This document shows positions 2,310 to 63,361 of a DNA stretch of 64,000 bases, piece after piece (the first letter of the stretch is position 1; each line of letters opens with the position of its first letter). The stretch is from positions 62,001-126,000 of the IMG/VR virus record IMGVR_UViG_3300050821_013430; one strand, 5' to 3'. The position numbers were made by a program, and so were the translations under genes. The notes under the pieces were generated by a model. It was not told the DNA's origin. It was given only the letters and a program-made list of their open reading frames with translations, and ran no database searches.

Positions 2310-2340
2310 TACAAGGATGCGATTTTATTGGTGGAAGCCT

Positions 2341-2368
2341 TTGACAAATAAAAACCGATGGGTATATT
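2341..2368 (+). promoter_or_regulatory. Sigma70-like promoter for the HNH gene
   Basis: TTGACA-16nt-TATATT. Confidence 0.55.
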
Positions 2369-2387
2369 GTTGATTAGAGCATCTTCA

Positions 2388-3278
2388 ATGTCAAAGAATA
2401 AAGAAACAAAATGGTGCAAATATTGCGAGACGATGCAGCCAGCAAAAGGTTTTCGCGGTAGGAAATGTCTGGAATGTTTAAGAAAGTATAGGCGACAATG
2501 GGAAAAAGATAATAAGGAAGAAATAGCGGCTAAAAAGAGACAATATCAAACCGAGCATAGAGAAGAGATCGCAATTAAGCGAAAACCATACTTCGATGCT
2601 CGTAAAGAGGAAAAAGCGGCGTATGATAAACTATATCGAGAAAAAAATAAAGAGAAGAAATCTGAACAAGATCGAAAATATTACCAAGAACATAGAGAAC
2701 CAAAATTAGCACACCAGCGACAATATAACATCAATAATAAAGAGAGAATAGCCGCATATCAAAAACAATACGCTTTTGATCATAAAAAACCATCGTTCAA
2801 AATCAACAAAGAGTGCTCAAAAATAAAAGAGGCTCGTCGGATTGCGAAACGAGCAACAGAACGGGAATATCGAAAAAGAAAAAGCGCAGTAAATCCTGTT
2901 TTTAAACTGAAGTGTGGTGTTTCTAGTTTAGTAAATCGTTATCTGAAACTATCTGGCGGTAATAAAAATGGTCTGATCCGCAATAACTATTTTCCTTATA
3001 GTGATGCAGAATTAAGAGGACATCTTGAAAAACAATTTGAGCCCTGGATGAACTGGAATAATCACGGTAAATATGATCCCAAAACCTGGGATGATAATGA
3101 TCCATCTACTTGGAAATGGCAACTCGATCATATCATCCCTCAATCCGATTTACCATCTTCTTCACCAGAAGAAGAGAACTTCAAGAAGTGTTGGGCGTTG
3201 GAAAATCTTCGACCGCTAAGCGCCAAACAGAACATTCTTGATGGAATTAGAAAAACAAGACACAAGAAAAAGAATTAG
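2388..3278 (+). CDS. HNH homing endonuclease
   Basis: N-terminal CxxC..CxxC, basic helical repeats, C-terminal WQLDHIIP...NLRPLSAKQN. Start moved to MSKNK (2388), downstream of a TTGACA/TATATT promoter. Confidence 0.8.
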   Translation: MSKNKETKWCKYCETMQPAKGFRGRKCLECLRKYRRQWEKDNKEEIAAKKRQYQTEHREEIAIKRKPYFDARKEEKAAYDKLYREKNKEKKSEQDRKYYQEHREPKLAHQRQYNINNKERIAAYQKQYAFDHKKPSFKINKECSKIKEARRIAKRATEREYRKRKSAVNPVFKLKCGVSSLVNRYLKLSGGNKNGLIRNNYFPYSDAELRGHLEKQFEPWMNWNNHGKYDPKTWDDNDPSTWKWQLDHIIPQSDLPSSSPEEENFKKCWALENLRPLSAKQNILDGIRKTRHKKKN

Positions 3279-5312: not shown

Positions 5313-6548
5313 TTACTCCTTATCGCTTTTATTGTTATTAATATGTTTCCAGCGCTTTTTATTGATTATTTTGCCTATCGTTCCTTGACTAACATTATAT
5401 TCATCGGCAAGTTTTTTCTGGCTATACTTTCTCGGAACGTATTTATTTATTATTTCTAATACTTGTTCTTCTGTTAATTTAGACATTTTGTGATTTTCAC
5501 CAAAAGGTGGAGATTTCTTAATCAAAGGAAGTATATTAAATTTTTTCATATATTCATAAATACTAGTTCTTGAACACCCAAATTCTTCCGCAACAAGATC
5601 ATAATTTCCTAAACGCTCATACGATGCCAATAAATCGTTTTTATCTAAATTTAGAATAAAGCACCCATCATCTATTTGTTTTACCTTATCTGATTCTACT
5701 TTTTTCCTTTCCAAAAAAATATTAGCGTCAGCGTAAAGACAATCCACTATTTTACGCATATCGTGAAATTTTTGGAAAGAAATTCTATAAAGACTATTAT
5801 TATCTGAAATATATTCTGCCCCTAAATATCCATTACTAGATAAATTACATTGTTTGATGAAAAACTCTCTAAATGTTTCAAGAACTTGTAAATTACCACA
5901 AATTCCGCAACTCATTTTTTTATATTTTCCATTTTCACTAAATGAAAACCATCCATCTCCATCAAAATATCCTCTTATAAAATGATGAAAAAGGAAGTGT
6001 TCTTTCAACCAATCAGGTATAGTATAAATTTTGGTTTTGGCCGGAACAACATTAAATCTCGCCAAATCTTTCACCATTTGCCAGCAACCTATACGTATTA
6101 CCGCCCTATTACCACTGATCATTGTTTGTATTTTACCATTTGGTTTTATAATGGTATTAATTTCGCCAGCACGCTGATAAATTTTAACTGGAGTATTTGA
6201 TTTGATTGATAGTCTAAATTTTTCAAGATGGGGCGCGTCTTTTTCTCCTAAATATATATTCACATTACTGCTATTTTTTGTTATATTACCGTCAGCGGCC
6301 ATAAATCCAGCCCAATAAAAACTTTCTTCATTATCCCGCCCAAAAAAATTTTCATCACACGTGTATCGTATTTTCTTTTTATATGGAATATCATAAATCT
6401 TCATCCGACTGATAACTGGATATGTTGATACTCCAAATTTTTCTGCCATGGCCGAGATACTTCCTAACTCATTATATTCTTTTATAAGAATTTCTCTCGT
6501 TAGAATATCGTCATACATTATACGATCTTTTCGAGCCATATCATTCAT
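5313..6548 (-). CDS. LAGLIDADG homing endonuclease with HTH domains
   Basis: FYWAGFMAADG and FIRGYFDGDG motifs, with flanking HTH segments. Confidence 0.85.
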   Translation of the reverse strand: MNDMARKDRIMYDDILTREILIKEYNELGSISAMAEKFGVSTYPVISRMKIYDIPYKKKIRYTCDENFFGRDNEESFYWAGFMAADGNITKNSSNVNIYLGEKDAPHLEKFRLSIKSNTPVKIYQRAGEINTIIKPNGKIQTMISGNRAVIRIGCWQMVKDLARFNVVPAKTKIYTIPDWLKEHFLFHHFIRGYFDGDGWFSFSENGKYKKMSCGICGNLQVLETFREFFIKQCNLSSNGYLGAEYISDNNSLYRISFQKFHDMRKIVDCLYADANIFLERKKVESDKVKQIDDGCFILNLDKNDLLASYERLGNYDLVAEEFGCSRTSIYEYMKKFNILPLIKKSPPFGENHKMSKLTEEQVLEIINKYVPRKYSQKKLADEYNVSQGTIGKIINKKRWKHINNNKSDKE

Positions 6549-6607
6549 ATTTTACCTCATTGTGCATAATGCGATGCAATTTTATGCCTATAAATATGAA
6601 TAATATA

Positions 6608-7126: not shown

Positions 7127-7140
7127 AAGAATATGCGAAA

Positions 7141-7473
7141 TTATGGCTTCTGTTTGGCTAATTCTACTTCTTGCGCCAAATGTTGTAGGGCTTCTTCAAT
7201 CCTACCTAGCCAAGCGTCTAAATTGATAGGAGTAGGGCCCAAGGTTGGAATCTGGGGTGCCGGATCATTGTCTGCGTGGTGAGAAGCGCGAAAACCTACT
7301 TCCGGAGAGAGATCATCAGGTTTGAGAGCACTTTTCATATTATTGTACTCATAAAGATCATCCAAGGCCCAAACGGTAGATCGGGCCTTCCAATCATTTT
7401 GGGCGGAATCCCCGTGTAATTGGGCTAATTTGAGGAAGCGAGAGCAGAGAAATTGTAAGTGCAGCAAGTCCAT
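7141..7473 (-). CDS. Hypothetical protein, possible internal head protein
   Basis: N-terminus MDLLHLQFLCSRFLKLAQ resembles that of the neighbouring gene. Confidence 0.55.
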   Translation of the reverse strand: MDLLHLQFLCSRFLKLAQLHGDSAQNDWKARSTVWALDDLYEYNNMKSALKPDDLSPEVGFRASHHADNDPAPQIPTLGPTPINLDAWLGRIEEALQHLAQEVELAKQKP

Positions 7474-7480: not shown

Positions 7481-8014
7481 CTAACTATTTAGAGCCTGAG
7501 CGACTTCGATCATCCGAGGATCGCCGGGTTTCAATTTTCCGTCCAATTGAGCATCATATACCCAAGCATTAGTGGGCCGGTGGTACTTGATAGTCTTCCC
7601 AGTGGCCAATCGGATCCTCTCCAGTAGCTCCGGCGGAATATGTTGGCCTTTGAAGATCACACGAACATTGTCAATCACCGCCTCGCCAGTTTCCCGATTG
7701 ACCTTGGCATCGACCACCATCTTAGAATCATGCGGCCAAGAATAGATCATTCCCAGGCGAACAACTGGATTGACCGCATACTCGGGGTCAAACTCGAGAA
7801 CTTCTTTACGGTCGTAGTCATCGTCTTCGGGCTGTCCAAACTGAGCAAACCAAGCCTCCACCACCGGCCAGACCCTTTCGTTCTTGGCTCGTTGGTCAGC
7901 TTTTCGCTGTTCTTCCTTGCGACGATCCTGTTCCCGCCAATCCTCATCGTCATCCCAGATTCCTGCAAGTTTGACGAACCGATCACATAAGCGTTGTAGT
8001 CGATCTAAATTCAT
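7481..8014 (-). CDS. Hypothetical protein, possible internal head protein
   Basis: Start reassigned to MNLDRLQRLCDRFVKLAG (8014), 6 nt after the late-promoter motif. Confidence 0.6.
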   Translation of the reverse strand: MNLDRLQRLCDRFVKLAGIWDDDEDWREQDRRKEEQRKADQRAKNERVWPVVEAWFAQFGQPEDDDYDRKEVLEFDPEYAVNPVVRLGMIYSWPHDSKMVVDAKVNRETGEAVIDNVRVIFKGQHIPPELLERIRLATGKTIKYHRPTNAWVYDAQLDGKLKPGDPRMIEVAQALNS

Positions 8015-9014
8015 GAGAAGATGCGAAAATATTAGCCTTTTGAGCGACTTCGTATTTACGAGGGAGGTAGATGATGGCATCGTGGTAGAGGTAGTTGGTG
8101 ATTTTAGAAAGCACACCATTTCCGCCATATTCAAGGGCATAGTGTTTTTTAATCAGACGAGGCTTCTTTTTATCAATGCCAAGTTCTTCGGCGAAAATAG
8201 CGCTAACTACGGAGAGAAATTCATTGGTACCACACAAAGAAAAATATACCTGAGGAACGGTTCTACCATTTTTTGGTTTACTAATGTAAAAACTACCATC
8301 ACCATCATTATAGCCACGAATAAAATGATGTCGCAATGAATGATTTATGATCCATTCTGGGAAGGTATAGATGAGACTTTTAGCAGGTACAATATTGAAT
8401 TTGGCCAGTTCATTGACCATTATTTCCGAAGTAATAGTAAAACTGCTGGCTAAGGAATTATTCCATTTTGGGTTACGTTTATTAGACTTCACCTCATATT
8501 GTCTAACTTTCGCATCTGATTTTAATAATTCCTTTATAAGAAGAAGATGCTGCTCATCATATCTAGCCAAACTGAGTTGTATTTCATAACGGAAATTACC
8601 ACTGGACGAAAGTCGTTTTTTGACGCATCCATCTGCTGCTAAAAATCCAGCCACGTAAAAAATCGCCTCATTTTCATTGGAAAAGAAATGATCATCACAA
8701 ATGCGTTTTATCTGCGGATTGAAATATAATCCAAACTTTTGCATATATCGTTTTATAGTGCCACAATCTACACCAAGTTTTCGTCCCACGGCCTTTAGAC
8801 TGCCGTACTCAGCATATGCTTGTTCTAATACTTCTTGTGTCAATAAAATATCTCGACGTGGTTTTACAATACAATCGATACCGCATATCTCGAAGGCTGT
8901 ATAGACGGTTATTGGATTTATACCATATTTTTCGGCTATTTTAGTAGCTGATCCAATGATTTCTAATTCTTGTTTTAATTGTTCGGGCGTTAAAATTTTG
9001 AGCAGTTTGTTCAT
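7983..9014 (-). CDS. LAGLIDADG homing endonuclease
   Basis: FYVAGFLAADG and FIRGYNDGDG motifs, N-terminal HTH repeats. Confidence 0.85.
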   Translation of the reverse strand: MNKLLKILTPEQLKQELEIIGSATKIAEKYGINPITVYTAFEICGIDCIVKPRRDILLTQEVLEQAYAEYGSLKAVGRKLGVDCGTIKRYMQKFGLYFNPQIKRICDDHFFSNENEAIFYVAGFLAADGCVKKRLSSSGNFRYEIQLSLARYDEQHLLLIKELLKSDAKVRQYEVKSNKRNPKWNNSLASSFTITSEIMVNELAKFNIVPAKSLIYTFPEWIINHSLRHHFIRGYNDGDGSFYISKPKNGRTVPQVYFSLCGTNEFLSVVSAIFAEELGIDKKKPRLIKKHYALEYGGNGVLSKITNYLYHDAIIYLPRKYEVAQKANIFASSHEFRSTTTLM

Positions 9015-10336: not shown

Positions 10337-10365
10337 ACAGAATATGCAGAATTAGGCATTGTTCT

Positions 10366-12207: not shown

Positions 12208-12232
12208 CTATGACCTCTCTACTTATGCCTAA

Positions 12233-13093
12233 TTATACCGAGTATTTCTTCTTTGCATCACCATACCCGATTTCCATCATTTTTTTGATCTTATGAGGGC
12301 TAAAATCCAAAATATTATCCACTAAATTGAAATCAGGCCTAATTACTTGTAATTTTACTAGCTTTTTATCGCTTACTCCGGCTGCGGCTAACTTATTGTA
12401 CATAATGGCCTTTTCTAAGTCATTGGACATAATTTTGTCAGATGATAAATCAATACTTCGCTTAAAAATGTCTAAAATATTAGGATTTTCAATGAAATTT
12501 TTGTTCCGAGTTTCAGGAGACGTCATAATGATATCAATTTCATCGGCATTTAGATCCAATGCCTCAGCAATTGGACTAATACTCTTGGTGCCACCATCAG
12601 CCCACCATTGATTTTTCATCCAAACAGGAGACAGTAAGCCAGGAAAAGAAGCAGAAGCAACAACTGCATCTATAAAATCATCATCAGTTTGAGAGAAGGT
12701 GGTGTATTTCCCAGAACAAAGAGAAACTGCGCCTACAATCACTTGTTTGCCAGAGGCACGAATTTTATCCAATGAAATATGAGTTTTGATTAATTTAGCC
12801 AATGGGGCGCTATCAAACACTGATTTTTCCCAAAGAGCGTGGAATTTGCCAAAGGGCTGCCAGCGTTGATATACCTGTTTGGTTGTCAATTTTTCCCAAA
12901 GAGAAGTTAAATCCTGAGCGGCTTGAATTTCTTGACCTGTTGGATACATAGCAAGAAGAGCGGCATTGATGGCTCCGACGCTGACGCCTAGGTAAGCGTC
13001 GTATTGTACTTGTAATTCTCCAAGCAAATATTTGAGGGCTCCGGCCTGAGACGCCCCTTTTGATCCGCCACCTGATAAAACAAGCGCCTTCAT
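12233..13093 (-). CDS. Patatin-like phospholipase
   Basis: LSGGGSKG, GVSVG nucleophile and ADGG motifs. Start at MKALVL with GGAG SD. Confidence 0.9.
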   Translation of the reverse strand: MKALVLSGGGSKGASQAGALKYLLGELQVQYDAYLGVSVGAINAALLAMYPTGQEIQAAQDLTSLWEKLTTKQVYQRWQPFGKFHALWEKSVFDSAPLAKLIKTHISLDKIRASGKQVIVGAVSLCSGKYTTFSQTDDDFIDAVVASASFPGLLSPVWMKNQWWADGGTKSISPIAEALDLNADEIDIIMTSPETRNKNFIENPNILDIFKRSIDLSSDKIMSNDLEKAIMYNKLAAAGVSDKKLVKLQVIRPDFNLVDNILDFSPHKIKKMMEIGYGDAKKKYSV

Positions 13094-13124
13094 ATATGTC
13101 TCCAAGTTTGACGTTTTATTATAT

Positions 13125-19440: not shown

Positions 19441-19441
19441 T

Positions 19442-20275: not shown

Positions 20276-20286
20276 GTTGTCTCCTT

Positions 20287-29372: not shown

Positions 29373-29418
29373 GTCAAAATGTCGAATTATTCCTATGGCC
29401 CATCTGTTGAAATTTGAG

Positions 29419-37635: not shown

Positions 37636-37710
37636 ATCATACGGTATGCGATCTTATTGAGATCAGAGAATATCGATTGAAATCGATGTGAAATCAATAG
37701 TTAGAGCTTG

Positions 37711-41603: not shown

Positions 41604-41635
41604 TCTCCCAAGGAATGCGAAATTATGCTGAGGGA

Positions 41636-42303: not shown

Positions 42304-42337
42304 AAAACAAAAAGGACGGAGTTTTTAGCTCCGTCCT
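42304..42337 (-). terminator. Rho-independent terminator after the major capsid gene
   Basis: AGGACGGAG/CTCCGTCCT stem followed by a U-tract on the minus strand. Confidence 0.85.
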
Positions 42338-42381
42338 CTGAGTTTAGCTTACGCTAAATGCTTGAAATTACTGGGTTATTA

Positions 42382-43470: not shown

Positions 43471-43492
43471 ATATCTAATTATGCCTGATTTA
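43471..43492 (-). promoter_or_regulatory. Tandem late-promoter motifs upstream of the capsid gene
   Basis: Overlapping TAAATCAGGCAT and ATAATTAGATAT. Confidence 0.55.
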
Positions 43493-45555: not shown

Positions 45556-45596
45556 ATTAGTCTCCTTTTACTGGTATATCAAATTATTAGTAATTA

Positions 45597-45630
45597 GAAA
45601 AACAAAAAGAGCCGAGAATTTCTTCTCGGC
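45597..45630 (-). terminator. Rho-independent terminator
   Basis: GCCGAGAA/TTCTCGGC stem with U-tract, downstream of 45660..46409. Confidence 0.8.
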
Positions 45631-45659
45631 CCCTTGAGCATTTTGATTACCTACTAAAC

Positions 45660-46409: not shown

Positions 46410-46486
46410 AGTTTTTTCCTTGTTGAGAAAGTCTTACACCTTGAAAGTCTAATTTGATGTCTTGATATTCCCATATTGGGAAGAAA

Positions 46487-47764: not shown

Positions 47765-47784
47765 GCTGATATACCTTTTTATGG

Positions 47785-49985: not shown

Positions 49986-49987
49986 AA

Positions 49988-52240: not shown

Positions 52241-52298
52241 TAGGGCTACCTTTGGTAGATAGAGGTCGATCTAATGCGGAAATATCGATAGTTAGGAA

Positions 52299-53348: not shown

Positions 53349-53400
53349 TTGAAACCTCGTAAATGTTTTCTAAGCAGGTATATATCAGGCGTTCTCTAAC

Positions 53401-54742: not shown

Positions 54743-57700
54743 TTAGAAGAGTCTTTTGTTGGAGGTTGAAAACGCGGCTGTAAGTTGTGAAACTAAGTCG
54801 CCTTCTTGTTCGCTCACTACATCAGCCTGACTAACCAAACCTACTTGCGGTAGGCGTCCGGCTGATTTTTGAAGTAGAGGGGCATGACGTGCGATAACCC
54901 TTTGCATACCTTCGAAGGATTCATCATTCCACTTCATAATCGATTCCACTTCACTAGCGATGGCTGTCTTTTCGTTGGGAATCAATCCACGATTTGCCAT
55001 ATCATAGGCAACCTCATAAGAACGAGCCAACTTGACACGATACTTGTTCATTTCTTCGTCAGCCTGAGCTTTAGCATGCTCCTTAACTAATTCAGTAGCA
55101 AACTCTTTACCAGAAGGCCCTACTTCACCATAGAACTCTTTCCAGTATTTGACTGCAGCGGGATCGACACCATTAGCAACCAGAGCGTCCAGATCTTTGG
55201 AGCTGAGTTTACCTTCTGATACGAGTTGCTGAATCATTTCCGCCTCTTTACGAACCTTGGGAGGCATGGTAGCTACTTCTAGCATTCTATCATGTTTCTC
55301 TTCTAGATTCTCTACGACTTCCAAACCATCTTGAGGCTTGACATCGAGAGGTCCGGGCTCAGCACCACCCTTAGGATGGAAATCATAGAACACGGGGTTC
55401 CATTTGATATCTGCTGCTAGCTTGGTGCGAAGTGTTTCGCGAGCTGCACGAGATTCTAGTTCAGCTGAAACTACTTGACTACCGGCCGGAACCATTACTG
55501 TCTTTCCGTCTGGCGTAGTAACCTTGACCGCATCAGCATCATTCATGTCGCTGGCGCAGCTAACTGAACTTTCCTCACTTGACATAGCATCCGAAGCATC
55601 ATTGACTTCCTGATCAGCATCATCCGCATCAGCGTCATCTGCTAGATCATCTGCCAACATTGCATCGACCGCTTCATTTGCTGCAGTTGCTGTTTGGGTT
55701 GCGGCATCATCAGCAGCCAAACCGGCCTCGATTTCCGCAATTTCTTTGCCTGTATCACCAATCATAGCCATTAGTCCTAAATCCATATGATCTCCGTTGC
55801 CTTGTCGTAGCATTTCTGCTTCTTCTTCGGCACGCTTTACCATTGCTTGGGTACCGTGCGCGTATTTGACGAAAGAATCCATTACCTTGAAAAGGTTAGC
55901 CAGAGACACGTTAGCGTCTGTAATGGCATCATTTACCAACGAATTGACCAAATCTTTGGTCTTTTCATTGACAACACCTTTATCGTACATTCCTACGATA
56001 GTGCTGAGCTCCTGTTCGTGATCTTGTAGAGAAGCGATGCACTCCTTGAACGCTAGAATCAGCGCGCCATTTAGCTCTTTCCGCATACTATGAAGAGCGG
56101 CGGTGCTAACACGACTTGAATCTGATGCATCGTCTGCGGGAGACATTGCCGCACCTGGAGCTGAAGCCTCAGGAAGAGCGGGAGCGCCCATATCACCAAG
56201 ATCGCCCATCTCGGCTTTTTCGCCTAATAGTTCTTTGACCACTTCTGTGGCATCCGAAATACCATCGCGCGCCTTGTCGAGAGCTTCCATGGCCTTATCT
56301 TTGACGTTGCCATCTTTACCTGCATCCATTCCTGCGTCAGGAGCGCTGGATGCTTCTCCGGCGCCGCTATCCATTGGAGGCATAGCATTAGGGGTGCCAG
56401 CTGGGGGAGGCGGAGGAGCAGCGGCTTGACCACTCTTGATAAGTGATGATGTCTTTGCTGCACCGAAAGCCTTTACCTTGGCAAGTAAATCCTCACCGTA
56501 GGTCTTGGTACCGATTACATTGTGAAGCGCATCTGCACGCCCAGCAGAAATTTCATCTACCGAAGCAGTAAGAACTAACTCACCGTCTTGGAAAACTCTC
56601 CAAACACTCTTGCCTGGATTCTGAGCATTCTTGGTAAAACGAGCAGTAAGACCGGGCTTTACTTCTGCTCTTTGTAGTAATTTCTTGCGGGCAAGCTCAT
56701 CACTGGGCTCCGCTGAATCGGGAGAGGGGTGTAGTCCTTCGACATCTCCAATATCTGGGAAAGGCTTTTGACCTACCATTTGCTTGTCTTCTTTATTGCG
56801 AAGGTGTTCATTGAGAGGATCAATCTCATAGCGTCGCTTGCCGGGTGTTGGTTCATTTAGCCCACCACCACCCAGGAAGTAGCCTTCTTTCTTGGTCTCT
56901 TCTAGAGCGTCTTTGACCTTTTGGATGACTGCTGTCCGACGCATAGCCCTTTCTTCGGCTTCGGCGCGGGCTAACATCTTTTTTAGCTCCATATCGGATT
57001 TTCCTTCATGATGTGAATTGGGGTATAGCCCTTCAACATCACCAACTCCTGGGAAAGGCTTTTGGCCTACCATTTGTTTGTCTTCCTTGTCGCGAAGATG
57101 CTCATTGAGAGGATCTACCTCATACCGACGTTCACCTGGAGTGGGCTCATTGAGTCCGCCCCCACCTTGAAAGTAGCTTTGTTTCTGCATATCTTTTGAT
57201 CCCGACATAGTATCCTCTTTGTTGATAGTGGCTAATTTATCCAAATCTTTTTGCATTTCAACTAACCGTCTCTCAATAGATGCCTTGACTTGCATAAGTT
57301 CTTGTTTCAATTCGTTATTGGTTTCAGCGGCTAAAAACCTTTGAGACGGAGGCGCCAGGGTTTGGTCAGTGCCTGGAAATTCAGATTCAGGCATTGCCAA
57401 AGTCCCTGAGGACTGATTATATGCCGCTTCATTAGTATCTTTTTGCATTGAGGTGTTGATTTCCTCTAATTTTTCGAAGGCAGAATTGATATCTTGCCTA
57501 AATTGACCAAGATCATTAGCCTGAATATCAAAAGAGGTAGCATTACCGCTCCCGTCATCACGAGCAAGTCTAGCGGTAAATTGATTATCTGCCAACCTCT
57601 TCAATTGTTCTTGTTTAGTTTCTACATAAGCATTGAGAGTATTGGCTGCTGCAATGATGTGCTTGATATGAGCTTTTGGATCAGCACCATTGACTACGAT

Positions 57701-58393
57701 TGATAGTTCAATTGGATTGAGATCGATATTGATTTCACCATAGCATGATTTATTTCTCATGTGAGTGCAAAAGTCAGATTCGACCCGAGCTACATTACCA
57801 CAATCCGAACAAATGGCCCGACCTACCGCAGTTCCCATACTTACCGCAGTTTGATACCCAGTGGCTACTTTGCGAGCTAAATCTGGATAGTTGAATTTGT
57901 CGAGAGCGCACAATCCGATAACGCGCTTCAAATTACGATCATAATAAGTGTCTACGATAAAGCCACGAACATGATCTACAGAGCTAGATTTATGATCTAT
58001 ACAGAGGGGCTTACCAATCCACTTCTTATATGCTTTGACTAACTCTTCTTCTGGAAAGATATCACCATTAGCATTTTTATATGGCTTGATAGCCTTATCA
58101 CTACATACCCATTTCCAACTTCCATTACTCTTATCCCAAGAGGCAGTAATCGTTTTACCGAAACGATCTAGTTTTTGGGTTCCATCTTCATTGATAGTCG
58201 AGGCCTCGGCAGCGTGAAGCATGGCCGCTGAAAAATATAGAAAATCATTTGCTTTGGGGGCAATTTTCTTCAAATTCTCCGCAAATTTACTAAATTCTTC
58301 TAATTTTTGAGGATCAAGAACTGGAATTACGGTTTCAATACCCTGAACATTTTCTGGACCAATTTCCAGCGATTCTCCAAATTTAGCAAACAT
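54743..58393 (-). CDS. Prohead maturation protease fused to scaffold region
   Basis: NGDIF..GKPLCIDH..VRGFIVD..VSMGT..CSDC..FCTH..ELSIVVNGAD (HK97-type protease), long helical/acidic C-region. Confidence 0.8.
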   Translation of the reverse strand: MFAKFGESLEIGPENVQGIETVIPVLDPQKLEEFSKFAENLKKIAPKANDFLYFSAAMLHAAEASTINEDGTQKLDRFGKTITASWDKSNGSWKWVCSDKAIKPYKNANGDIFPEEELVKAYKKWIGKPLCIDHKSSSVDHVRGFIVDTYYDRNLKRVIGLCALDKFNYPDLARKVATGYQTAVSMGTAVGRAICSDCGNVARVESDFCTHMRNKSCYGEINIDLNPIELSIVVNGADPKAHIKHIIAAANTLNAYVETKQEQLKRLADNQFTARLARDDGSGNATSFDIQANDLGQFRQDINSAFEKLEEINTSMQKDTNEAAYNQSSGTLAMPESEFPGTDQTLAPPSQRFLAAETNNELKQELMQVKASIERRLVEMQKDLDKLATINKEDTMSGSKDMQKQSYFQGGGGLNEPTPGERRYEVDPLNEHLRDKEDKQMVGQKPFPGVGDVEGLYPNSHHEGKSDMELKKMLARAEAEERAMRRTAVIQKVKDALEETKKEGYFLGGGGLNEPTPGKRRYEIDPLNEHLRNKEDKQMVGQKPFPDIGDVEGLHPSPDSAEPSDELARKKLLQRAEVKPGLTARFTKNAQNPGKSVWRVFQDGELVLTASVDEISAGRADALHNVIGTKTYGEDLLAKVKAFGAAKTSSLIKSGQAAAPPPPPAGTPNAMPPMDSGAGEASSAPDAGMDAGKDGNVKDKAMEALDKARDGISDATEVVKELLGEKAEMGDLGDMGAPALPEASAPGAAMSPADDASDSSRVSTAALHSMRKELNGALILAFKECIASLQDHEQELSTIVGMYDKGVVNEKTKDLVNSLVNDAITDANVSLANLFKVMDSFVKYAHGTQAMVKRAEEEAEMLRQGNGDHMDLGLMAMIGDTGKEIAEIEAGLAADDAATQTATAANEAVDAMLADDLADDADADDADQEVNDASDAMSSEESSVSCASDMNDADAVKVTTPDGKTVMVPAGSQVVSAELESRAARETLRTKLAADIKWNPVFYDFHPKGGAEPGPLDVKPQDGLEVVENLEEKHDRMLEVATMPPKVRKEAEMIQQLVSEGKLSSKDLDALVANGVDPAAVKYWKEFYGEVGPSGKEFATELVKEHAKAQADEEMNKYRVKLARSYEVAYDMANRGLIPNEKTAIASEVESIMKWNDESFEGMQRVIARHAPLLQKSAGRLPQVGLVSQADVVSEQEGDLVSQLTAAFSTSNKRLF
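56727..57175 (-). repeat. Two copies of a roughly 50-aa repeat within the protease/scaffold
   Basis: YFxGGGGLNEPTPGxRRYExDPLNEHLRxKEDKQMVGQKPFP occurs twice. Confidence 0.9.
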
Positions 58394-59066
58394 TTGTTTT
58401 TCCTATACGTTGTAAAAATTCTATATCGGTCAATTTACCCTTTTTTAAATTACAAATTTCGCATGCGGGTGCCAAATTATCAATAGTATGATCGCCACCC
58501 CGACATAACGGAATTTTATGATCTAAATGCAAATTTTCGCCCCTCTTTACACTTATAGAACAATAAGCACATTTATGATCAAAATTTTCGAGCAATTGAT
58601 CGACTTCATTTTGTCGAATACGTGGAAATTTATCGAGTCGCTTGCGGCGACGTCTATTATTTAGAAGAATAGAATCAATATTTTCCTCTCTATATTTTCT
58701 ATTTCGTTCTTTATGATATTCTTTATTATCTTGATACGACGATCTAACGCTTTCTAATCTCTCTTCACGATGTTTGGCATAGCTTTTCGAGGAAATCTCC
58801 TTGGCACGTTCTGGATTTTCTTTTCTCCAAATTCTTAGCCCTTCATTGATCTGATATTTATTTTCTTTTCTATATTCTTTACGATATTCATTATTATATG
58901 ATGGGTATGTTTTTCTATCCGCTTTATGCTCATCTCTATATTTTTTAGCGCATAATTTACATTGGGCGGAAAGGCCATCATCAGTATTTTTATTCTTATA
59001 GAAATTATCATTGGTCGCTTCTTTGCTTTGCTTACAAGTGCAACAAGTTTTTACAATGATAACCAT
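58383..59066 (-). CDS. HNH homing endonuclease
   Basis: CAYC..LDHKIPLCRGG..NLAPACEICNLKKG. Confidence 0.85.
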   Translation of the reverse strand: MVIIVKTCCTCKQSKEATNDNFYKNKNTDDGLSAQCKLCAKKYRDEHKADRKTYPSYNNEYRKEYRKENKYQINEGLRIWRKENPERAKEISSKSYAKHREERLESVRSSYQDNKEYHKERNRKYREENIDSILLNNRRRRKRLDKFPRIRQNEVDQLLENFDHKCAYCSISVKRGENLHLDHKIPLCRGGDHTIDNLAPACEICNLKKGKLTDIEFLQRIGKTNVC

Positions 59067-59210: not shown

Positions 59211-59234
59211 ATGTGCCTCAGGATAAATAGCGAA

Positions 59235-59855
59235 TTATTCCCTCTTTTTCCCATTCAACATTTCTTGCCTTTGGTGAAAAAGATCAATTAAGAGAGGGTC
59301 TTGTTTTTCAATTTTAATTTGTAAACTATCACTAACACCGTCAACCCAGGTTCTACCTAAAATATTAGATTGAATATGATTCTTGATTCTATCATCTATA
59401 ATTTCTTCAATTTCGTCAGTATCCTTTTGGATGGCATCAATCGATGCGGTAATATCTTTAACAAAATCACTTGATTTCAGATCACTAAAAATTTCAGAAA
59501 AATCATTTACATCGTCTTCCAGATCATCAACAGAAGAAATAAATGATTTCATCAATTTGAAAGTTTGCGTGTCAGAAGAAAAAATTTGCATTAAAGTGAT
59601 ACATCTAAAAGCCATATTCTTGAATTGATTAAAATTCTCAATAACTCGATCTCTATAATTTCTTAGTGCAACTCTGAATTTATAAATTTGCTCTTCCGAA
59701 ATATCAGGGTGATCCTTAAAAGGAGTGTGCATAATATTCAAATGATTAACAGCAATCAACAAAAGTTTTTTAGATCGATCGAAAGCAATCAATGCTTTTT
59801 CGGCCTGAGCTTTTTCAGCTTCCGTTACGTCATATGAAAGTTGAGTCAACGTCAT
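59235..59855 (-). CDS. Helical hypothetical protein
   Basis: Intact ORF with late-promoter motif. Confidence 0.6.
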   Translation of the reverse strand: MTLTQLSYDVTEAEKAQAEKALIAFDRSKKLLLIAVNHLNIMHTPFKDHPDISEEQIYKFRVALRNYRDRVIENFNQFKNMAFRCITLMQIFSSDTQTFKLMKSFISSVDDLEDDVNDFSEIFSDLKSSDFVKDITASIDAIQKDTDEIEEIIDDRIKNHIQSNILGRTWVDGVSDSLQIKIEKQDPLLIDLFHQRQEMLNGKKRE

Positions 59856-59881
59856 TTGTATGTATATGCCAAATTAGGCGT

Positions 59882-60723: not shown

Positions 60724-61128
60724 CTACTCTAATACCACATTATGTTGTTTGCAAAATAATAGCAAAGTAGCTGCTAGAGCCTTTTCACCAGAATTTTCTT
60801 CTTCATCTAAAATAAGACGATCAAAACATTTCTTGTATAATTCTAAAAATTCTTTCACAATTGAATCTTCACATTGTTTGCGAAGCTGGCGCATAATAGC
60901 AGAAAATGATAAGTCTTCAATATCCGTCAAATCAATAACTTCTGATAAGCCTTGCTGCGCTCTTTTTTTTCTTTTTTTGTCTAAGTGCTTAAAGTATTCT
61001 ATTTGTCGTAATCGTTTTTCTGCCTGCTCCCTAGATGAATATGTTCCCAAATCTTTACCCTTTTCGGATAAGACTCTATATTTACCATTAGGTAATTTTC
61101 TAATCCTGGCGAGCTTATACAACTCCAT
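60724..61128 (-). CDS. Hypothetical head-associated protein
   Basis: YKLAR, GKDLGTYSSREQAEKRLRQIEYFKH. Confidence 0.55.
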   Translation of the reverse strand: MELYKLARIRKLPNGKYRVLSEKGKDLGTYSSREQAEKRLRQIEYFKHLDKKRKKRAQQGLSEVIDLTDIEDLSFSAIMRQLRKQCEDSIVKEFLELYKKCFDRLILDEEENSGEKALAATLLLFCKQHNVVLE

Positions 61129-61132: not shown

Positions 61133-61531
61133 TTACTTGCCCTTGAATAAGTCTTTTACAATTTTACTGTCTCGACTATTTATGAACGTATCTTTGAGAA
61201 CACCAGTCTCATCCACTTCTGTTAGGAATCTGATGGCTCTTTCATTTAGACAAATGATATTACCAAACTGTATCTTTTTAGTTTTCTGATCTATATAGGC
61301 GCAATTTAGAACTAAACACTCCTTGAAAGCCGTAATAACTTTGCCAACCAACACTGCCGGATAACAAACCGTACTATCGTCATATTTGATATCCTCGTAT
61401 CGATCACCTACATAAATCTCCACTATTCGCCCTTTCAATACCTTAGCTACTACCTCGGCAAGTGAAATTGTACGATCTTTATTTTCTTGCAAATCTTGAA
61501 CGGCAAGTTCAAATTCTTTTTCAGTCGCCAT
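61133..61531 (-). CDS. Hypothetical protein
   Basis: Start likely at MATEKEF. Confidence 0.55.
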   Translation of the reverse strand: MATEKEFELAVQDLQENKDRTISLAEVVAKVLKGRIVEIYVGDRYEDIKYDDSTVCYPAVLVGKVITAFKECLVLNCAYIDQKTKKIQFGNIICLNERAIRFLTEVDETGVLKDTFINSRDSKIVKDLFKGK

Positions 61532-62237
61532 AGTTAGATGTCTTTTTCTTAGCATATTTCTTGATCGATAATTGTTTTTGAGAGGCTAGAGAGGATAATA
61601 ATTGATCTAAAAACTTCTCTAATTTAGATAAAAAGTCTTCATTGCCGGGCGATATCGTTGTTGGTTGGGATTTAGTGGCAGCATAAAACTCTGATAATTT
61701 TTGTTTATAGTTTGCATAAGTTTTAACTTTATTGAGAAATTTTTCTAGATCTCCTAAGGTAATTTTCCCATCTTGATCCAGATCTAAGCCTCGATTAGCG
61801 TAGTAAGCTTTTATTTCGAAATCAATAGAAACAGTACGATGTGGATTAGGTTCTGGATGACTAGAAATGATAATGGCATTAGGATTGTTAGCCTTCACAT
61901 CCGGATACGAAAGGGCGAGGGGCCATAAATTAGCCACATACATTTGAGCTGCCGATTTGAAAGGGCCACCATTGAGGCTAAGTTGAGTACGAAAATATCG
62001 TTCAATATATGGTAATTGTTCTTCACCTGACAATTGTCGAAAATCGTCAGGAGAACCACGAAAGCCTACTCCGCGTAAAGAACTGGGTAAAAATTGCGTC
62101 AAACCAACCGCCTTAGATGGTACTTGTGGATTAAGGCCAGACTCCAACTGCATAATAGCCAGTACATCCTCTGGTTTTAGGCCTAAAGAATTGCTCATTT
62201 GAGCTAATTTAATGTAGAAGTTGGGGCCTAGGGCCAT
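61521..62237 (-). CDS. Lytic transglycosylase (SLT/lysozyme-like), likely virion-associated
   Basis: IMQLESG..AVGLTQF..EQL, plus an EF-hand-like LDLDQDGKIT. Confidence 0.75.
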   Translation of the reverse strand: MALGPNFYIKLAQMSNSLGLKPEDVLAIMQLESGLNPQVPSKAVGLTQFLPSSLRGVGFRGSPDDFRQLSGEEQLPYIERYFRTQLSLNGGPFKSAAQMYVANLWPLALSYPDVKANNPNAIIISSHPEPNPHRTVSIDFEIKAYYANRGLDLDQDGKITLGDLEKFLNKVKTYANYKQKLSEFYAATKSQPTTISPGNEDFLSKLEKFLDQLLSSLASQKQLSIKKYAKKKTSNYGD

Positions 62238-62238
62238 T

Positions 62239-63321
62239 TTATCCTTTTAATATAACTTTGGCTATCAATTGGGCTATAATCGGCTTTGATGTTTCAGTTT
62301 TAGCCGATGGATTAAATGGTGGCTTAAAAGGAGGTTTAACTTCCTTAGATGATTCTGGTTTAGCTGGTGGATTATTTTGAATGTATTCCTTGAGAGACTC
62401 TATTTTAGCAGATTCTTCCGGAGAAACTGGAGCAGGAATTGGTTTTGAAATAGGTAATCCTGGATACGGTTTGGTAGGAGTAGAAGATGGTTTACCAGAA
62501 GAAGGGGACGACGGTCCTCCGACAGTCGAAGCGGGGGCGCCTGGAAGTACCCCTCCTACACCGAGAGCTTTGGACTTAGCCTCTTCTGCTGCTTTTTGAG
62601 ATTCAATATAACTTTTAACATATTTGTTGTAAAAATCATTGAAAGACTTATTATAGGCACGATATTTATTGTTGATGCCTGGCAACAGTCGAACATAATC
62701 TTCAATTTTACGACCTACCCGATATTTACCTAATTGTTTAAGTAAATTAAGGAAGGTCGATGATAATGCCTTGCTCTTGTTAAGCATATTGTTAGTTTGA
62801 TTTTTTAATTCTCTAGCTGTTTGTGGAAAACGCTTTTCCCATTGTCGCAGCCCTTTGCCACGATCAGTGGTCATTGAATACCACCAATCAGATAGCCCAG
62901 CCTCTTTAACACTAGCAGTTTTAGTAGGAGCGCCTTTGAACCATTTAGGCATCTTTTCCATCAGATACTCTTTTTGATTCGGATCTAAATCTCCAAATAA
63001 AAAAGCATGATGATGTTTATGTACTACATCATTGAGGCCTTGGAAGGCTGTCATAATTTCTTCCATCTTCTCGTGAAATTTAGCCAAATAAGAAATAGCA
63101 AACATATACTCGCGACGATTGAAATTAGATTCCGCTATTTTGAGATAATCTTTAAGCTCAAAAGCCTTTTCACGAACTTCGTCATCAACACTAATCAGTT
63201 TGTCGATAATTTCTCGATACTCATCAGACCCTAAAAAATCGGTCTTTAGATCTTTCAATTTCCCAAAAGTTTTTTCTTTGGTACGTTGAAGCCAATTGAG
63301 TCGTTGTGCAATCTTATCCAT
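62239..63321 (-). CDS. Putative internal head protein
   Basis: MDKIAQ, KTASVKEAG motifs, Pro-rich tail. Confidence 0.5.
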   Translation of the reverse strand: MDKIAQRLNWLQRTKEKTFGKLKDLKTDFLGSDEYREIIDKLISVDDEVREKAFELKDYLKIAESNFNRREYMFAISYLAKFHEKMEEIMTAFQGLNDVVHKHHHAFLFGDLDPNQKEYLMEKMPKWFKGAPTKTASVKEAGLSDWWYSMTTDRGKGLRQWEKRFPQTARELKNQTNNMLNKSKALSSTFLNLLKQLGKYRVGRKIEDYVRLLPGINNKYRAYNKSFNDFYNKYVKSYIESQKAAEEAKSKALGVGGVLPGAPASTVGGPSSPSSGKPSSTPTKPYPGLPISKPIPAPVSPEESAKIESLKEYIQNNPPAKPESSKEVKPPFKPPFNPSAKTETSKPIIAQLIAKVILKG

Positions 63322-63361
63322 ATTTAGCCCTCTATGTGTGAGAATGCCATTTTATCGCCTA

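What the first reader, a model, noticed from the sequence alone, without database searches (positions are those of the whole stretch)
2317..63355. Recurrent 12-bp phage late-promoter motif ATAAWWTNGCAT
Minus-strand matches precede structural genes: 2317-2328 ATAAAATCGCAT, 6574-6585 ATAAAATTGCAT, 7133-7144 and 41615-41626 ATAATTTCGCAT, 8021-8032 ATATTTTCGCAT, 10344-10355 CTAATTCTGCAT, 12225-12236 ATAATTAGGCAT, 29379-29390 ATAATTCGACAT, 37646-37657 ATAAGATCGCAT, 45576-45587 ATAATTTGATAT, 47771-47782 ATAAAAAGGTAT, 52274-52285 ATATTTCCGCAT, 59227-59238 ATAATTCGCTAT, 59866-59877 CTAATTTGGCAT, 63344-63355 ATAAAATGGCAT. No conserved -35 is evident, suggesting a phage sigma factor or RNA polymerase reading a single element, analogous to T4 late promoters.
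Basis: partly seen in the sequence, partly recalled or inferred. Interest (0 to 1): 0.7.

Follow-up and report, generated by a model that had tools for sequence, protein, structure and literature searches.

The report
Conserved single-element promoter of soil megaphages
A 12-base signal (ATAA-N4-GCAT) recurs just upstream of virion genes in a 473-kb uncultivated soil phage and its relatives; it is most likely a promoter read by the phages' own sigma factor, often so close to the start codon that the mRNA would have almost no leader.

Summary
An unbiased search of about 590,000 gapped 4-mer pairs ranks ATAA-N4-GCAT first upstream of genes in this 472,749-bp IMG/VR phage (15 observed, 0.9 expected). 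It also ranks first in an independent 480-kb relative (12 vs 0.92). No -35 element is conserved.

The motif stays at orthologous promoters in relatives whose proteins are only 35-55% identical. It precedes the major head protein (a variant site), tail fibre, tail sheath and other genes of the virion-gene region. It also precedes the phage's own 209-aa sigma-70-family gene. No phage RNA polymerase was found.

New point: on the gene strand, 16 of 36 sites have an ATG 5-7 nt after the motif. Eleven of these, at spacers 6-7, open long ORFs with no room for a Shine-Dalgarno sequence. This fits a start site 6-7 nt downstream and leaderless mRNAs.

Start sites, timing and sigma dependence are inferred, not shown. 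The only RNA evidence is weak: soil metatranscriptome contigs.

It works like T4 gp55 or phiEco32 gp36 single-element promoters but belongs to neither family. The nearest isolate, Bacillus phage G, lacks the motif. I found no earlier description.

The parts
2317..2328 (-). Motif ATAAAATCGCAT. A 7-nt spacer leads to the ATG at 2309 (559-aa ORF). It lies in a 48-nt divergent intergenic region.
   Evidence: 16.7 bits; no alternative in-frame start in the first 40 codons. The divergent ORF 2358-3278 is endonuclease-like.
6574..6585 (-). Motif ATAAAATTGCAT, 25 nt upstream of the ATG at 6548 (411-aa HTH/LAGLIDADG-type endonuclease). A Shine-Dalgarno-like GAGG lies in between.
   Evidence: (14.6 bits).
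7133..7144 (-). Motif ATAATTTCGCAT (consensus). A 6-nt spacer leads to the ATG at 7126 (172-aa ORF). The TAA inside the motif is the stop codon of ORF 7141-7473.
   Evidence: (18.1 bits). The N-terminus matches the G001 ortholog.
8021..8032 (-). Motif ATATTTTCGCAT. A 6-nt spacer leads to the ATG at 8014 (177-aa ORF). It overlaps the 3' end of endonuclease ORF 7983-9014.
   Evidence: (15.1 bits).
10344..10355 (-). Motif CTAATTCTGCAT. A 7-nt spacer leads to the ATG at 10336 (111-aa ORF).
   Evidence: (12.2 bits).
12225..12236 (-). Motif ATAATTAGGCAT, 17 nt upstream of the ATG at 12207 (130 aa), with a Shine-Dalgarno-like GAGAGG in the leader.
   Evidence: 15.7 bits.
29379..29390 (-). Motif ATAATTCGACAT. 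A 6-nt spacer leads to the ATG at 29372 (318-aa collagen-like tail fibre protein).
   Evidence: (14.2 bits).
37646..37657 (-). Motif ATAAGATCGCAT. ATGs follow at spacers 5 and 10; the second (37635) opens a 111-aa ORF upstream of the 2349-aa tail fibre gene.
   Evidence: (15.2 bits).
41615..41626 (-). Motif ATAATTTCGCAT, 11 nt upstream of the ATG at 41603 (237-aa ORF). 68% of distinct orthologous upstream regions in relatives keep the motif.
   Evidence: (18.1 bits).
43471..43482 (-). Many relatives carry TAATAAT-N3-5-(C/T)AT(A/T)T at the same place.
   Evidence: (11.1 bits). An RNA contig from a soil metatranscriptome ends at 43452, 12 nt short of the predicted start site.
45576..45587 (-). 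Weak variant ATAATTTGATAT, 20 nt upstream of the ATG at 45555 (281 aa, tail-fibre-assembly-like). An AAGGAG Shine-Dalgarno lies in the leader. A strong terminator sits immediately upstream.
   Evidence: (13.1 bits with the first matrix).
47771..47782 (-). Weak variant ATAAAAAGGTAT. A 6-nt spacer leads to the ATG at 47764 (425-aa ORF conserved next to the head gene in 58 relatives).
   Evidence: (11.6 bits).
52274..52285 (-). Motif ATATTTCCGCAT, 33 nt upstream of the ATG at 52240 (386 aa). The orthologous promoter TATAAT-N3-GCATATTATAGAC is conserved in relatives.
   Evidence: 14.4 bits; 44% of orthologous regions at 10 bits or more, against 0% antisense.
59227..59238 (-). Weak match ATAATTCGCTAT; doubtful. 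The next ATG opens only a short ORF, and the HNH endonuclease gene starts 160 nt downstream.
   Evidence: (11.8 bits).
59866..59877 (-). Motif CTAATTTGGCAT, 10 nt upstream of the ATG at 59855 (206 aa).
   Evidence: 14.9 bits.
63344..63355 (-). Motif ATAAAATGGCAT, 22 nt upstream of the ATG at 63321 (360 aa), with a Shine-Dalgarno-like AGAGGG in the leader.
   Evidence: 16.6 bits.
58469..58480 (-). Possible extra site ATAATTTGGCAC, 75 nt upstream of the 1216-aa protease-domain ORF. A GATATA motif lies between it and the ATG.
   Evidence: (12.5 bits).
60732..60743 (-). Possible extra site ATAATGTGGTAT, 10 nt upstream of the ATG at 60721 (279 aa).
   Evidence: (11.5 bits).
42311..42339 (-). Intrinsic-terminator-like hairpin (11 pairs plus a T run) just after the head gene stop. 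It closes the predicted monocistronic head-protein transcription unit.
   Evidence: The 3' end of the RNA contig is at 42361.
45606..45635 (-). Intrinsic-terminator-like hairpin (13 pairs plus a T run) between gene 45660-46409 and the motif at 45576.

Best explanation
ATAA-N4-GCAT (refined consensus S-ATAATTYSGCAT) is a single-element promoter of a widespread clade of uncultivated soil megaphages distantly related to Bacillus phage G.

Proposed mechanism, all steps inferred:
- Host core RNA polymerase carries the clade-specific 209-aa phage sigma, which has region 2, a region-3.0-like segment and a region-4-like domain.
- The 3' half of the motif (T-N-G-C-A-T) acts as a non-canonical -10 hexamer at -12 to -7.
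- The 5' ATAA, at -18 to -15, acts like an extended -10 element, so no -35 contact is needed.
- Transcription starts 6-7 nt after the final T.

The promoters drive virion genes (head, tail fibres, sheath, others) and the sigma gene itself, which would give positive feedback.

In about a third of the promoters the start codon sits exactly at the predicted start site. Those mRNAs would be leaderless, or have a leader of at most 7 nt, and would be translated without a Shine-Dalgarno sequence. The rest have short leaders with ordinary Shine-Dalgarno sequences.
For: Shown by computation:
- Top-ranked upstream dyad in two independent genomes; 20-40-fold upstream enrichment.
- Strong strand specificity.
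- Gene-specific conservation at orthologous promoters: 44-68% of relatives for genes that have the motif here, 0-6% for genes that lack it, at most 5% antisense (alignments).
- No -35 element.
- Canonical sigma-70-type promoter matches are not enriched: 33 found vs 29.9 expected.
- ATG spacing: 2, 11 and 3 of 36 sites have an ATG at spacers 5, 6 and 7, against about 0.56 expected at each position. Eleven of these, at spacers 6-7, open ORFs of 50 aa or more. The pattern is replicated in G001.
- Those ORFs have no alternative in-frame start with a clear Shine-Dalgarno match in the first 40 codons; only two weak GTGA/GGTG matches at codons 29-39. Their N-termini agree with orthologs.
- Sites with longer spacers carry normal Shine-Dalgarno sequences. 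This fits a promoter better than a ribosome signal.
- At 2317 the motif sits in a 48-nt divergent intergenic region, so any promoter for the 559-aa gene must lie within 48 nt of its ATG.
- Terminator-promoter-gene order at 45635-45555 and head gene-terminator order at 42339.
- Soil metatranscriptome contigs, 100% identical, cover the head gene from 42361 to 43452. That is from just before the terminator to 12 nt short of the predicted start site, and not beyond the motif.

Sigma:
- A 209-aa ORF with TIGR02937 at 61.8 bits, Sigma70_r2 at 27.3 bits and Sigma70_r4 at 22.2 bits.
- It aligns to SigA/RpoS across region 2 and the 'RTIRLPVH' segment of region 3.0, with substitutions at the -10 and extended -10 contact positions (together with my own knowledge of sigma-70 residues W433/W434/Q437/T440/H455/E458).
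- Orthologs at 54-55% identity in relatives G001 and G003, and more than 400 homologs, nearly all 207-210 aa, many on 250-480 kb contigs.
- The sigma gene is preceded by ATAACGAAGCAT 28 nt upstream. Five of six orthologous sigma genes examined keep ATAA-N4-(G/A)(C/T)AT at the same place.
- No phage RNA polymerase was detected.

Precedent: phiEco32 gp36 promoters are a single element, tAATGTAtA, with start sites 6-8 bp downstream (PMC8948821).
Against: - No start site has been mapped. The RNA evidence consists of low-coverage assembled contigs whose ends are imprecise. The contig over gene 45660-46409 stops 2 nt before its ATG although relatives have a conserved leader of about 80 nt there.
- Late timing is assumed from gene content only.
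- The most conserved base of ordinary -10 elements (A at -11) is not conserved in the proposed register. An alternative register, with TAAWWT as the -10 and GCAT as the discriminator, would put the start site 2 nt after the motif and give 4-5-nt leaders instead of none.
- The sigma has a region-4-like domain, which normally reads a -35 element that is absent here.
- A second single-element motif (GGATATA) and a second sigma-4/HTH protein exist, so the pairing of sigma and motif is not unique.
- A sigma gene behind its own promoter needs another source of first expression.
- Nothing is known about whether the unknown host translates leaderless mRNAs efficiently.
Confidence: 0.6

Rival explanations
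1. The motif is a promoter, but the 209-aa phage sigma does not read it. It is recognised by a host sigma factor (primary or alternative), possibly helped by a phage activator, or by another phage protein such as the 159-aa sigma-4/HTH protein. The 209-aa sigma would then direct the other class (GGATATA).
For: - The sigma gene itself carries the motif. That would also be expected if the sigma is simply one member of a class transcribed by something else.
- Two promoter-like classes and two sigma-like proteins exist.
- The sigma has a region-4-like domain with no matching -35 element here.
Against: - The motif resembles no host consensus that I could test, and canonical sigma-70-type promoter matches are not enriched.
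- Virion genes carry this motif while GGATATA dominates elsewhere. Reading virion genes as late genes (my inference), a phage-made factor for this class is the usual phage logic.
- Many alternative sigmas autoregulate.
- The sigma and the motif are both conserved across the clade and both are undetected in phage G.
Confidence: 0.22
2. The element acts on RNA rather than DNA. It would be a Shine-Dalgarno-independent translation-initiation or enhancer signal, or an RNA-processing site, placed 6-7 nt before start codons. It might work with the phage-encoded ribosomal protein S21.
For: - The 5-7-nt distance between GCAT and ATG equals the usual Shine-Dalgarno spacing.
- These genes have no Shine-Dalgarno sequence.
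- The 5' half is AU-rich.
- The phage encodes an S21 homolog.
- Several sites lie inside operon-like gene strings where read-through transcripts are plausible (for example 7133 and 8021).
Against: - More than half of the sites lie 10-70 nt from the start codon with a normal Shine-Dalgarno sequence in between. Orthologous sites in relatives are mostly of this kind. A ribosome signal would be useless there.
- The site at 2317 heads a divergent unit with no upstream same-strand gene.
- One site follows a terminator.
- The head-gene RNA contig does not include the motif.
Confidence: 0.08
3. The motif is the operator of a DNA-binding regulator (repressor or activator) rather than the core promoter, or a recognition sequence linked to the many homing endonucleases nearby.
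For: - CAT-N6-ATG is a short inverted repeat.
- Several sites adjoin HNH or LAGLIDADG-like endonuclease genes: 2317, 6574, 8021, 41615, 52274.
Against: - The motif as a whole is asymmetric and strictly oriented with the downstream gene.
- The ATG is the genuine start codon of long ORFs.
- The motif is conserved at orthologous promoters in relatives that lack those endonuclease genes; for example ORF 41636-42310 has no counterpart in 80 loci.
- No other conserved promoter-like element lies beside it.
Confidence: 0.07
4. Chance or composition artefact, for example AT-rich intergenic DNA plus stop codons (TAA) and start codons.
For: The TAA inside the motif is the upstream gene's stop codon at 7133. 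Three of the 15 listed sites are weak.
Against: - Shuffles: 0 of 100 reached the observed count.
- Top dyad of about 590,000 in two genomes.
- Gene-specific conservation in relatives.
- At 2317, 29379 and 47771 the TAA is not a stop codon of an upstream gene.
Confidence: 0.01

Closest known systems
phiEco32 middle/late promoters read by the phage sigma gp36 (single element tAATGTAtA, start site 6-8 bp downstream; PMC8948821)
   Same: One conserved element near -10 with no -35. A phage-encoded sigma-70-family protein on host core polymerase. The predicted distance from element to start site is the same (6-7 nt). The promoters sit upstream of virion genes.
   Different: - The consensus is unrelated (ATAA-N4-GCAT).
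- gp36 lacks homology to region 4, whereas this sigma has a region-4-like domain (22 bits).
- The phage is a 473-kb myovirus-like megaphage of a different lineage.
- Many promoters are fused to start codons.
- Nothing here has been tested biochemically.
T4 late promoters (TATAAATA) read by gp55 with gp33 and the gp45 sliding clamp
   Same: A single AT-rich element around -10 with no -35, used for virion genes, with a phage sigma on host core polymerase.
   Different: - The consensus differs; a conserved GCAT half is required here.
- The sigma matches the gp55-type family phrog_234 only weakly (21 bits) and looks like a shortened group-1/2 sigma.
- No co-activator or clamp dependence is known.
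- T4 late mRNAs have leaders with Shine-Dalgarno sequences.
Extended -10 promoters of bacterial sigma-70 (TGnTATAAT), which need no -35
   Same: Two short blocks, one at -12 to -7 and one a few bases upstream, suffice without a -35. The sigma keeps a region-3.0-like segment.
   Different: - The sequence of both blocks differs, and the upstream block lies at -18 to -15 rather than -15 to -14.
- A at -11 is not conserved.
- Sigma residues at the TG-contact positions are substituted: H455 to K and E458 to R in the alignment (residue roles from my own knowledge).
Leaderless mRNAs (lambda cI from PRM; common in Actinobacteria and Deinococcus, where the -10 element lies about 7 nt before the ATG)
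   Same: A promoter element ends 6-7 nt before an ATG that has no Shine-Dalgarno sequence. Every start codon of this class found here (by a search for ATG) is ATG, as leaderless translation requires.
   Different: - Here the arrangement is tied to a phage-specific promoter class and to virion genes of a megaphage.
- Most other genes of the phage use strong Shine-Dalgarno sequences.
- The 5' ends have not been mapped.
Bacillus phage G (Donellivirus gee), the nearest cultivated relative
   Same: Major head protein 53.5% identical. Genome of about 0.5 Mb. It also encodes sigma-70-like factors, with gp3 next to the structural genes.
   Different: - The motif is not enriched in 40.8 kb of phage G's structural region.
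- The 209-aa sigma has no BLAST-level match in phage G.
- Published phage G work reports only generic promoter predictions (PMC12484599).

Membership tests
T4-type late promoter / gp55 system | 8-bp TATAAATA element centred near -10 | tested here: not met
   The consensus is ATAATTYSGCAT, with G9, C10, A11 and T12 nearly invariant.
T4-type late promoter / gp55 system | gp55-family sigma (region 2 only) encoded by the phage | tested here: inconclusive
   The only match to phrog_234 ('late sigma transcription factor') is the 209-aa sigma ORF, at 21 bits. The same ORF scores 61.8 bits on TIGR02937 and has a region-4-like domain.
T4-type late promoter / gp55 system | No -35 element | tested here: met
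   Information content is at most 0.12 bit from -35 to -4 relative to the motif in 39 sites.
T4-type late promoter / gp55 system | Activation through gp33 and a DNA-loaded sliding clamp | not testable with these tools
   Needs biochemistry. I did not search for gp33 or gp45 homologs.
phiEco32 gp36-type single-element promoter | A single conserved element with the start site 6-8 bp downstream | tested here: inconclusive
   Single element: met. Start site: not mapped. Indirect support comes from ATG at spacer 5-7 in 16 of 36 sites and from the 5' end of the head-gene RNA contig.
phiEco32 gp36-type single-element promoter | Consensus tAATGTAtA and a gp36-like sigma without region 4 | tested here: not met
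   The consensus is different. The sigma has a region-4-like domain: PF04545 at 22.2 bits against a cut-off of 24.1, and the alignment to SigB/SigA region 4.
Canonical sigma-70 promoter (-35 TTGACA / -10 TATAAT) | Two hexamers with 16-18-nt spacing | tested here: not met
   No -35 element. Sigma-70-type matches in 37-54 kb are not above shuffled expectation: 33 vs 29.9.
Leaderless mRNA | Start codon AUG with no upstream Shine-Dalgarno sequence, placed at the distance where a -10-type element puts the start site | tested here: met
   11 long ORFs on the gene strand of G000 and 5 in G001 start with ATG 6-7 nt after the motif. A separate list at a lower score threshold gives 12 such ORFs, with no room for a Shine-Dalgarno sequence and no alternative start with a clear Shine-Dalgarno match.
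Leaderless mRNA | The 5' end of the transcript is the A of AUG | not testable with these tools
   Only assembled metatranscriptome contigs were available. Raw 5' ends could not be examined.
Sigma-70 family protein (candidate reader) | Region 2 and region 4 domains | tested here: met
   PF04542 at 27.3 bits (over the cut-off), PF04545 at 22.2 bits (just under), TIGR02937 at 61.8 bits (over the cut-off of 42.9). PDB alignments to SigB, SigA and RpoS.

The most novel reading that the evidence does not exclude
A whole clade of soil megaphages couples a private sigma/promoter pair to leaderless translation. The promoter is positioned so that many virion-gene mRNAs begin at their AUG. This would make expression of those genes independent of Shine-Dalgarno-based initiation, perhaps with help from the phage-encoded ribosomal protein S21, while the sigma amplifies itself from the same promoter.
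Probability: 0.3. Interest if true: 0.65.

Novelty: new variant of a known kind. Interest (0 to 1): 0.5.

Why it matters
- Almost nothing is known about how the 0.3-0.5-Mb soil phages related to phage G schedule their genes; none of this clade is cultivated.
- A conserved promoter consensus that can be searched for, together with its probable clade-specific sigma, gives a first transcription map for hundreds of metagenomic genomes: transcription units, likely late genes, and a self-amplifying sigma.
- It improves start-codon annotation, because many starts have no Shine-Dalgarno sequence.
- It offers a small orthogonal sigma/promoter pair that can be tested in vitro without the host.
- The frequent fusion of promoter and start codon predicts leaderless mRNAs for many virion-region genes, although most other genes of the phage use strong Shine-Dalgarno sequences. 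That would be an unusual translation strategy, and it is directly testable.

Tried and rejected
- Nucleotide search of 20 kb of the window against isolated phages: no match.
- Multisubunit RNAP (PF00562, PF00623) and T7-type RNAP (PF00940) in the genome: none convincing. The PF00940 search had no positive control.
- Plain k-mer enrichment over all upstream regions did not surface the motif. It found GGATATA and the Shine-Dalgarno sequence instead. The gapped-dyad search did find it.
- -35 element: none.
- TGTCAAG, seen upstream of some sites in relatives, turned out to be mostly an intragenic coding-strand word (53 vs 14). I dropped it.
- 'The ATAA is just the upstream stop codon': true at 7133 only.
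- Motif in Bacillus phage G: not enriched.
- RNA evidence: one soil metatranscriptome holds the phage, but only as low-coverage contigs. Contig ends are too imprecise for start-site calls, and the contig over gene 45660-46409 ends 2 nt before its ATG, which I do not trust. Both read-laying runs were used.
- IF3 homolog in the phage: none.
- tRNAs in the window: none.
- Host identity was not determined.
- I did not run a sigma-DNA complex prediction, because a free sigma with duplex DNA is not a meaningful model of -10 recognition.

Full report
CONTEXT

The window is bases 62,001-126,000 of a 472,749-bp IMG/VR virus record. It is linear, CheckV rates it 100% complete, and its GC content is 45%. 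Nearly all genes lie on the minus strand.

The window holds the virion-gene module:
- major head protein, 42382-43401 (phrog_2522, E 3e-80);
- a virion structural protein, 38573-40228;
- collagen-like tail fibres, 28416-29372 and the 2349-aa ORF 30195-37244;
- a tail-fibre-assembly-like gene, 44710-45555;
- a baseplate-hub-like gene, 61521-62237;
- a 1216-aa ORF with a head-protease-like domain, 54743-58393.

A tail sheath gene lies just upstream of the window. The nearest cultivated phage is Bacillus phage G, with a head protein 53.5% identical. At least 312 IMG/VR contigs encode a head protein 79-87% identical, and several are 200-480 kb long. The DNA source is a soil metagenome.

Yes.
- The strict pattern occurs 5 times in the window against 0.52 expected, and none of 100 shuffles reached 5. 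In the whole genome it occurs 7 times on the minus strand and never on the plus strand.
- I ran a search that did not presuppose the motif. It counted every 4-mer, gap of 0-8, 4-mer combination (about 590,000 dyads) in the 60 nt upstream of all ORFs, against tiles of the whole genome. ATAA-N4-GCAT came first: 15 observed against 0.90 expected. In the 50-130 kb region it was the only dyad that passed the filter, at 7 against 0.09.
- The same search on an independent 480-kb relative (G001, most proteins about 50% identical) also put ATAA-N4-GCAT first, at 12 against 0.92.
- 16 of the 27 occurrences of the dyad in the genome lie within 70 nt upstream of a same-strand ORF start. That zone is 5% of the sequence space, so the density is 27 times higher there; in G001 it is 20 times higher.
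- A weight matrix refined on this genome has consensus ATAATTTCGCAT. A1, T2, A3, G9, C10, A11 and T12 are nearly invariant and the four central positions are W/Y/S-biased. Applied to G001, it shows 40-fold upstream enrichment.
- There is no -35 element: no position from -35 to -4 exceeds 0.12 bit.

Three listed sites (45576, 47771, 59227) are weak, and 59227 is doubtful.

CONSERVATION

I took 80 related loci, found orthologs by tblastn and examined their upstream regions.
- Genes that carry the motif in this phage keep it in relatives. For the ortholog of 51080-52240, 44% of distinct upstream regions score at least 10 bits. The figure is 68% for 40890-41603 and 47% for 38573-40228. The antisense strand gives at most 5% and shuffled sequence about 1%.
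- Neighbouring genes without the motif here (40241-40885, 52656-53348, 47785-48795) give 0-6%.
- The alignments show the same element in place although the proteins are only 35-55% identical. Examples are TATAAT-N3-GCATATTATAGAC before the 51080 ortholog, ATAAT-N3-GCATAAT before the 40890 ortholog, and TAATAAT-N3-5-(C/T)AT(A/T)T before many head genes.
- Phage G's structural region does not show the motif.

On the gene strand of this genome, 36 sites score at least 12.5 bits. An ATG follows at spacer 5, 6 or 7 in 2, 11 and 3 of them, against about 0.56 expected per position. Eleven of these ATGs, at spacers 6-7, open ORFs of at least 50 aa. G001 shows the same pattern: five sites at spacers 6-7, all opening ORFs.

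A separate list at a slightly lower score threshold gives twelve such ORFs. For these there is no room for a Shine-Dalgarno sequence. Four have no other in-frame start in the first 40 codons. None has an alternative start preceded by a clear Shine-Dalgarno match; there are only two weak GTGA/GGTG matches far downstream. Where orthologs exist, the N-termini agree within a few residues.

The remaining sites lie 10-70 nt from the start codon and have ordinary Shine-Dalgarno sequences in the leader. Most genes of the phage use AAGGAG-type Shine-Dalgarno sequences.

A bacterial -10 hexamer ends at -7. With the final T of GCAT at -7, a 6-nt spacer puts +1 on the A of ATG. The simplest reading is a promoter whose start site lies 6-7 nt downstream. 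It would give leaderless mRNAs where the gene abuts it and short-leader mRNAs elsewhere.

The site at 2317 is telling. It lies in a 48-nt divergent intergenic region between the 559-aa gene and an endonuclease-like gene on the other strand. The promoter of the 559-aa gene must therefore be within 48 nt of its ATG, and the motif ends 7 nt before it.

TRANSCRIPTION-UNIT ANATOMY AND RNA

Two strong terminator-like hairpins lie on the minus strand. One is just after the head gene (42339-42311). The other lies between gene 45660-46409 and the motif at 45576.

One soil metatranscriptome holds contigs 100% identical to the phage. They cover the head gene (42361-42594 and 42755-43452), gene 45660-46409, and small parts of three other virion-region genes. 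They cover nothing else in the 12 kb examined, whereas the DNA run covers everything evenly. The patchy, gene-confined coverage argues for RNA rather than contaminating DNA.

The head-gene contigs run from 22 nt short of the terminator stem to 12 nt short of the start site predicted from the 43471 motif (43464). They do not include the motif. This is consistent with the model but weak, because contig ends from low-coverage assemblies are imprecise. The other well-covered contig stops 2 nt before its ATG.

WHO READS THE MOTIF?

The genome has no detectable multisubunit or T7-type RNA polymerase. The T7-type search had no positive control.

It does encode a 209-aa sigma-70-family protein (G000 2112-2741, minus strand):
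- TIGR02937 at 61.8 bits, region 2 at 27.3 bits and a region-4-like domain at 22.2 bits.
- Its closest solved relatives are SigB, SigA and RpoS. The alignment runs through regions 2.1-2.4 and the 'RTIRLPVH' segment of region 3.0.
- From my own knowledge of sigma-70, positions W433, W434, Q437 and T440 contact the -10 element and H455 and E458 contact the extended -10 element. These positions are substituted here. That would fit an altered -10 and extended -10 specificity, but it is inference.

The sigma is a hallmark of the clade. Orthologs are 54-55% identical in the relatives G001 and G003. More than 400 metagenomic homologs exist, nearly all 207-210 aa, many on 250-480 kb contigs. It has no BLAST-level match in phage G.

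The sigma gene itself is preceded, 28 nt upstream, by ATAACGAAGCAT (G000 2770-2781). Five of six orthologous sigma genes examined have ATAA-N4-(G/A)(C/T)AT at the same place. This looks like autoregulation, as in many alternative sigmas. It could also mean that the sigma gene is just another member of a class read by something else.

A second single-element motif, cGGATATA(t/g), is more abundant: 55 genes against 11 expected. It dominates outside the virion-gene region, is also the top k-mer in G001, and also lacks a -35. A second sigma-4/HTH protein of 159 aa exists. The pairing of the 209-aa sigma with ATAA-N4-GCAT is therefore the most likely assignment but is not proven.

COMPARISON WITH KNOWN SYSTEMS

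The architecture matches the single-element promoters read by phage sigmas. These are T4 late promoters (TATAAATA, gp55) and, more closely, phiEco32 gp36 promoters (tAATGTAtA, start sites 6-8 bp downstream; PMC8948821). It also resembles extended -10 promoters, which dispense with the -35.

It belongs to neither phage family. The consensus differs. The sigma matches the gp55-type family only weakly, at 21 bits. Unlike gp36, it has a region-4-like domain.

Canonical sigma-70-type promoter matches are not enriched in the region. Literature searches found no description of promoters for this clade. Recent multi-omics work on phage G reports only generic software predictions. A dRNA-seq study of early phiKZ infection detected no leaderless phage transcripts, and AR9 leaders were 26-491 nt.

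VERDICT

It extends to a clade-wide, apparently undescribed promoter consensus.

It remains unproven in function (start site, timing, which factor reads it), and the T4 comparison is an analogy, not membership.

The added value is threefold: the promoter-start-codon fusion that predicts leaderless virion-gene mRNAs, the motif in front of the sigma gene, and the existence of a second promoter-like class.

Confidence that the motif is a promoter is about 0.8. For the full model (this sigma, a start site 6-7 nt downstream, leaderless subset) it is about 0.6.

Noticed in passing
Genome-wide; in the window for example 26322-26327, 53381-53386, 58422-58427 (minus strand); also relative G001: A second upstream motif, cGGATATA(t/g), precedes 55 genes against 11 expected. 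It is also the top upstream k-mer in relative G001. It has no -35. In 17 of 55 cases the start codon lies 8-11 nt downstream, again a leaderless-like arrangement. It dominates outside the virion-gene region and is probably another promoter class.
   Followed up: partly
window 43429-43443 (minus strand), with a second hairpin at 43448-43462: The head-gene 5' UTR carries a conserved stem-loop, GCUGG-loop-CYGGC, followed by AAAUAAUUC. In 27 relatives five pairs are never broken and two pairs show compensatory changes. The RNA contig includes it, so it lies in the mRNA. It could be a stability or translation-control element.
   Followed up: partly
window 2358-3278 (+), 5313-6548, 7983-9014, 41636-42310, 43556-44716 (+), 52299-52652, 58383-59066: Seven HNH, endonuclease VII or LAGLIDADG-like homing-endonuclease ORFs lie in 64 kb. 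The head gene is flanked by one on each side. ORF 41636-42310 has no counterpart in 80 related loci. They coincide with low-GC patches.
   Followed up: partly
G000 2770-2781 (outside the window) and loci L092, L093, L125-L127: The phage sigma gene is preceded by the same motif in this phage and in five of six orthologous sigma genes examined, which suggests autoregulation. Conserved gene order in the four contigs whose DNA was read: Zn-ribbon protein (in three, then a small ORF), sigma, ribonucleotide reductase large subunit.
   Followed up: yes
G000 168174-168335 (outside the window): The phage encodes a ribosomal protein S21 homolog (62.7 bits). No IF3 homolog was found. It may bear on Shine-Dalgarno-independent initiation.
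   Followed up: no
window 13000-29400: An island of sugar-modification genes: a C-methyltransferase at 15837-17261, and multi-domain glycosyltransferases at 21707-23797 and 23794-26283. A pectate-lyase-like protein lies at 26359-28416. Several of the 2-kb GC bins in the island (0.46-0.53) are above the genome mean of 0.45. It sits between virion genes.
   Followed up: no
window 42361-43452, 45680-46411, 40006-40156, 49627-50134: A public soil metatranscriptome contains 100%-identical transcript contigs of the head gene and a few other virion-region genes. This suggests the phage (or DNA carrying it) was being transcribed in that soil sample.
   Followed up: partly
locus L011 (IMGVR_UViG_3300021407_000383, 221 kb): A second IMG/VR contig carries a head gene identical at the protein level, and its upstream regions at three genes match those of this phage. 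It is probably the same phage assembled from another data set.
   Followed up: no
protein P0016: One homolog of the phage sigma is deposited at NCBI as a protein of a Nitrososphaeraceae archaeon MAG, on a 3.4-kb contig. This is most likely a mis-binned phage fragment.
   Followed up: no
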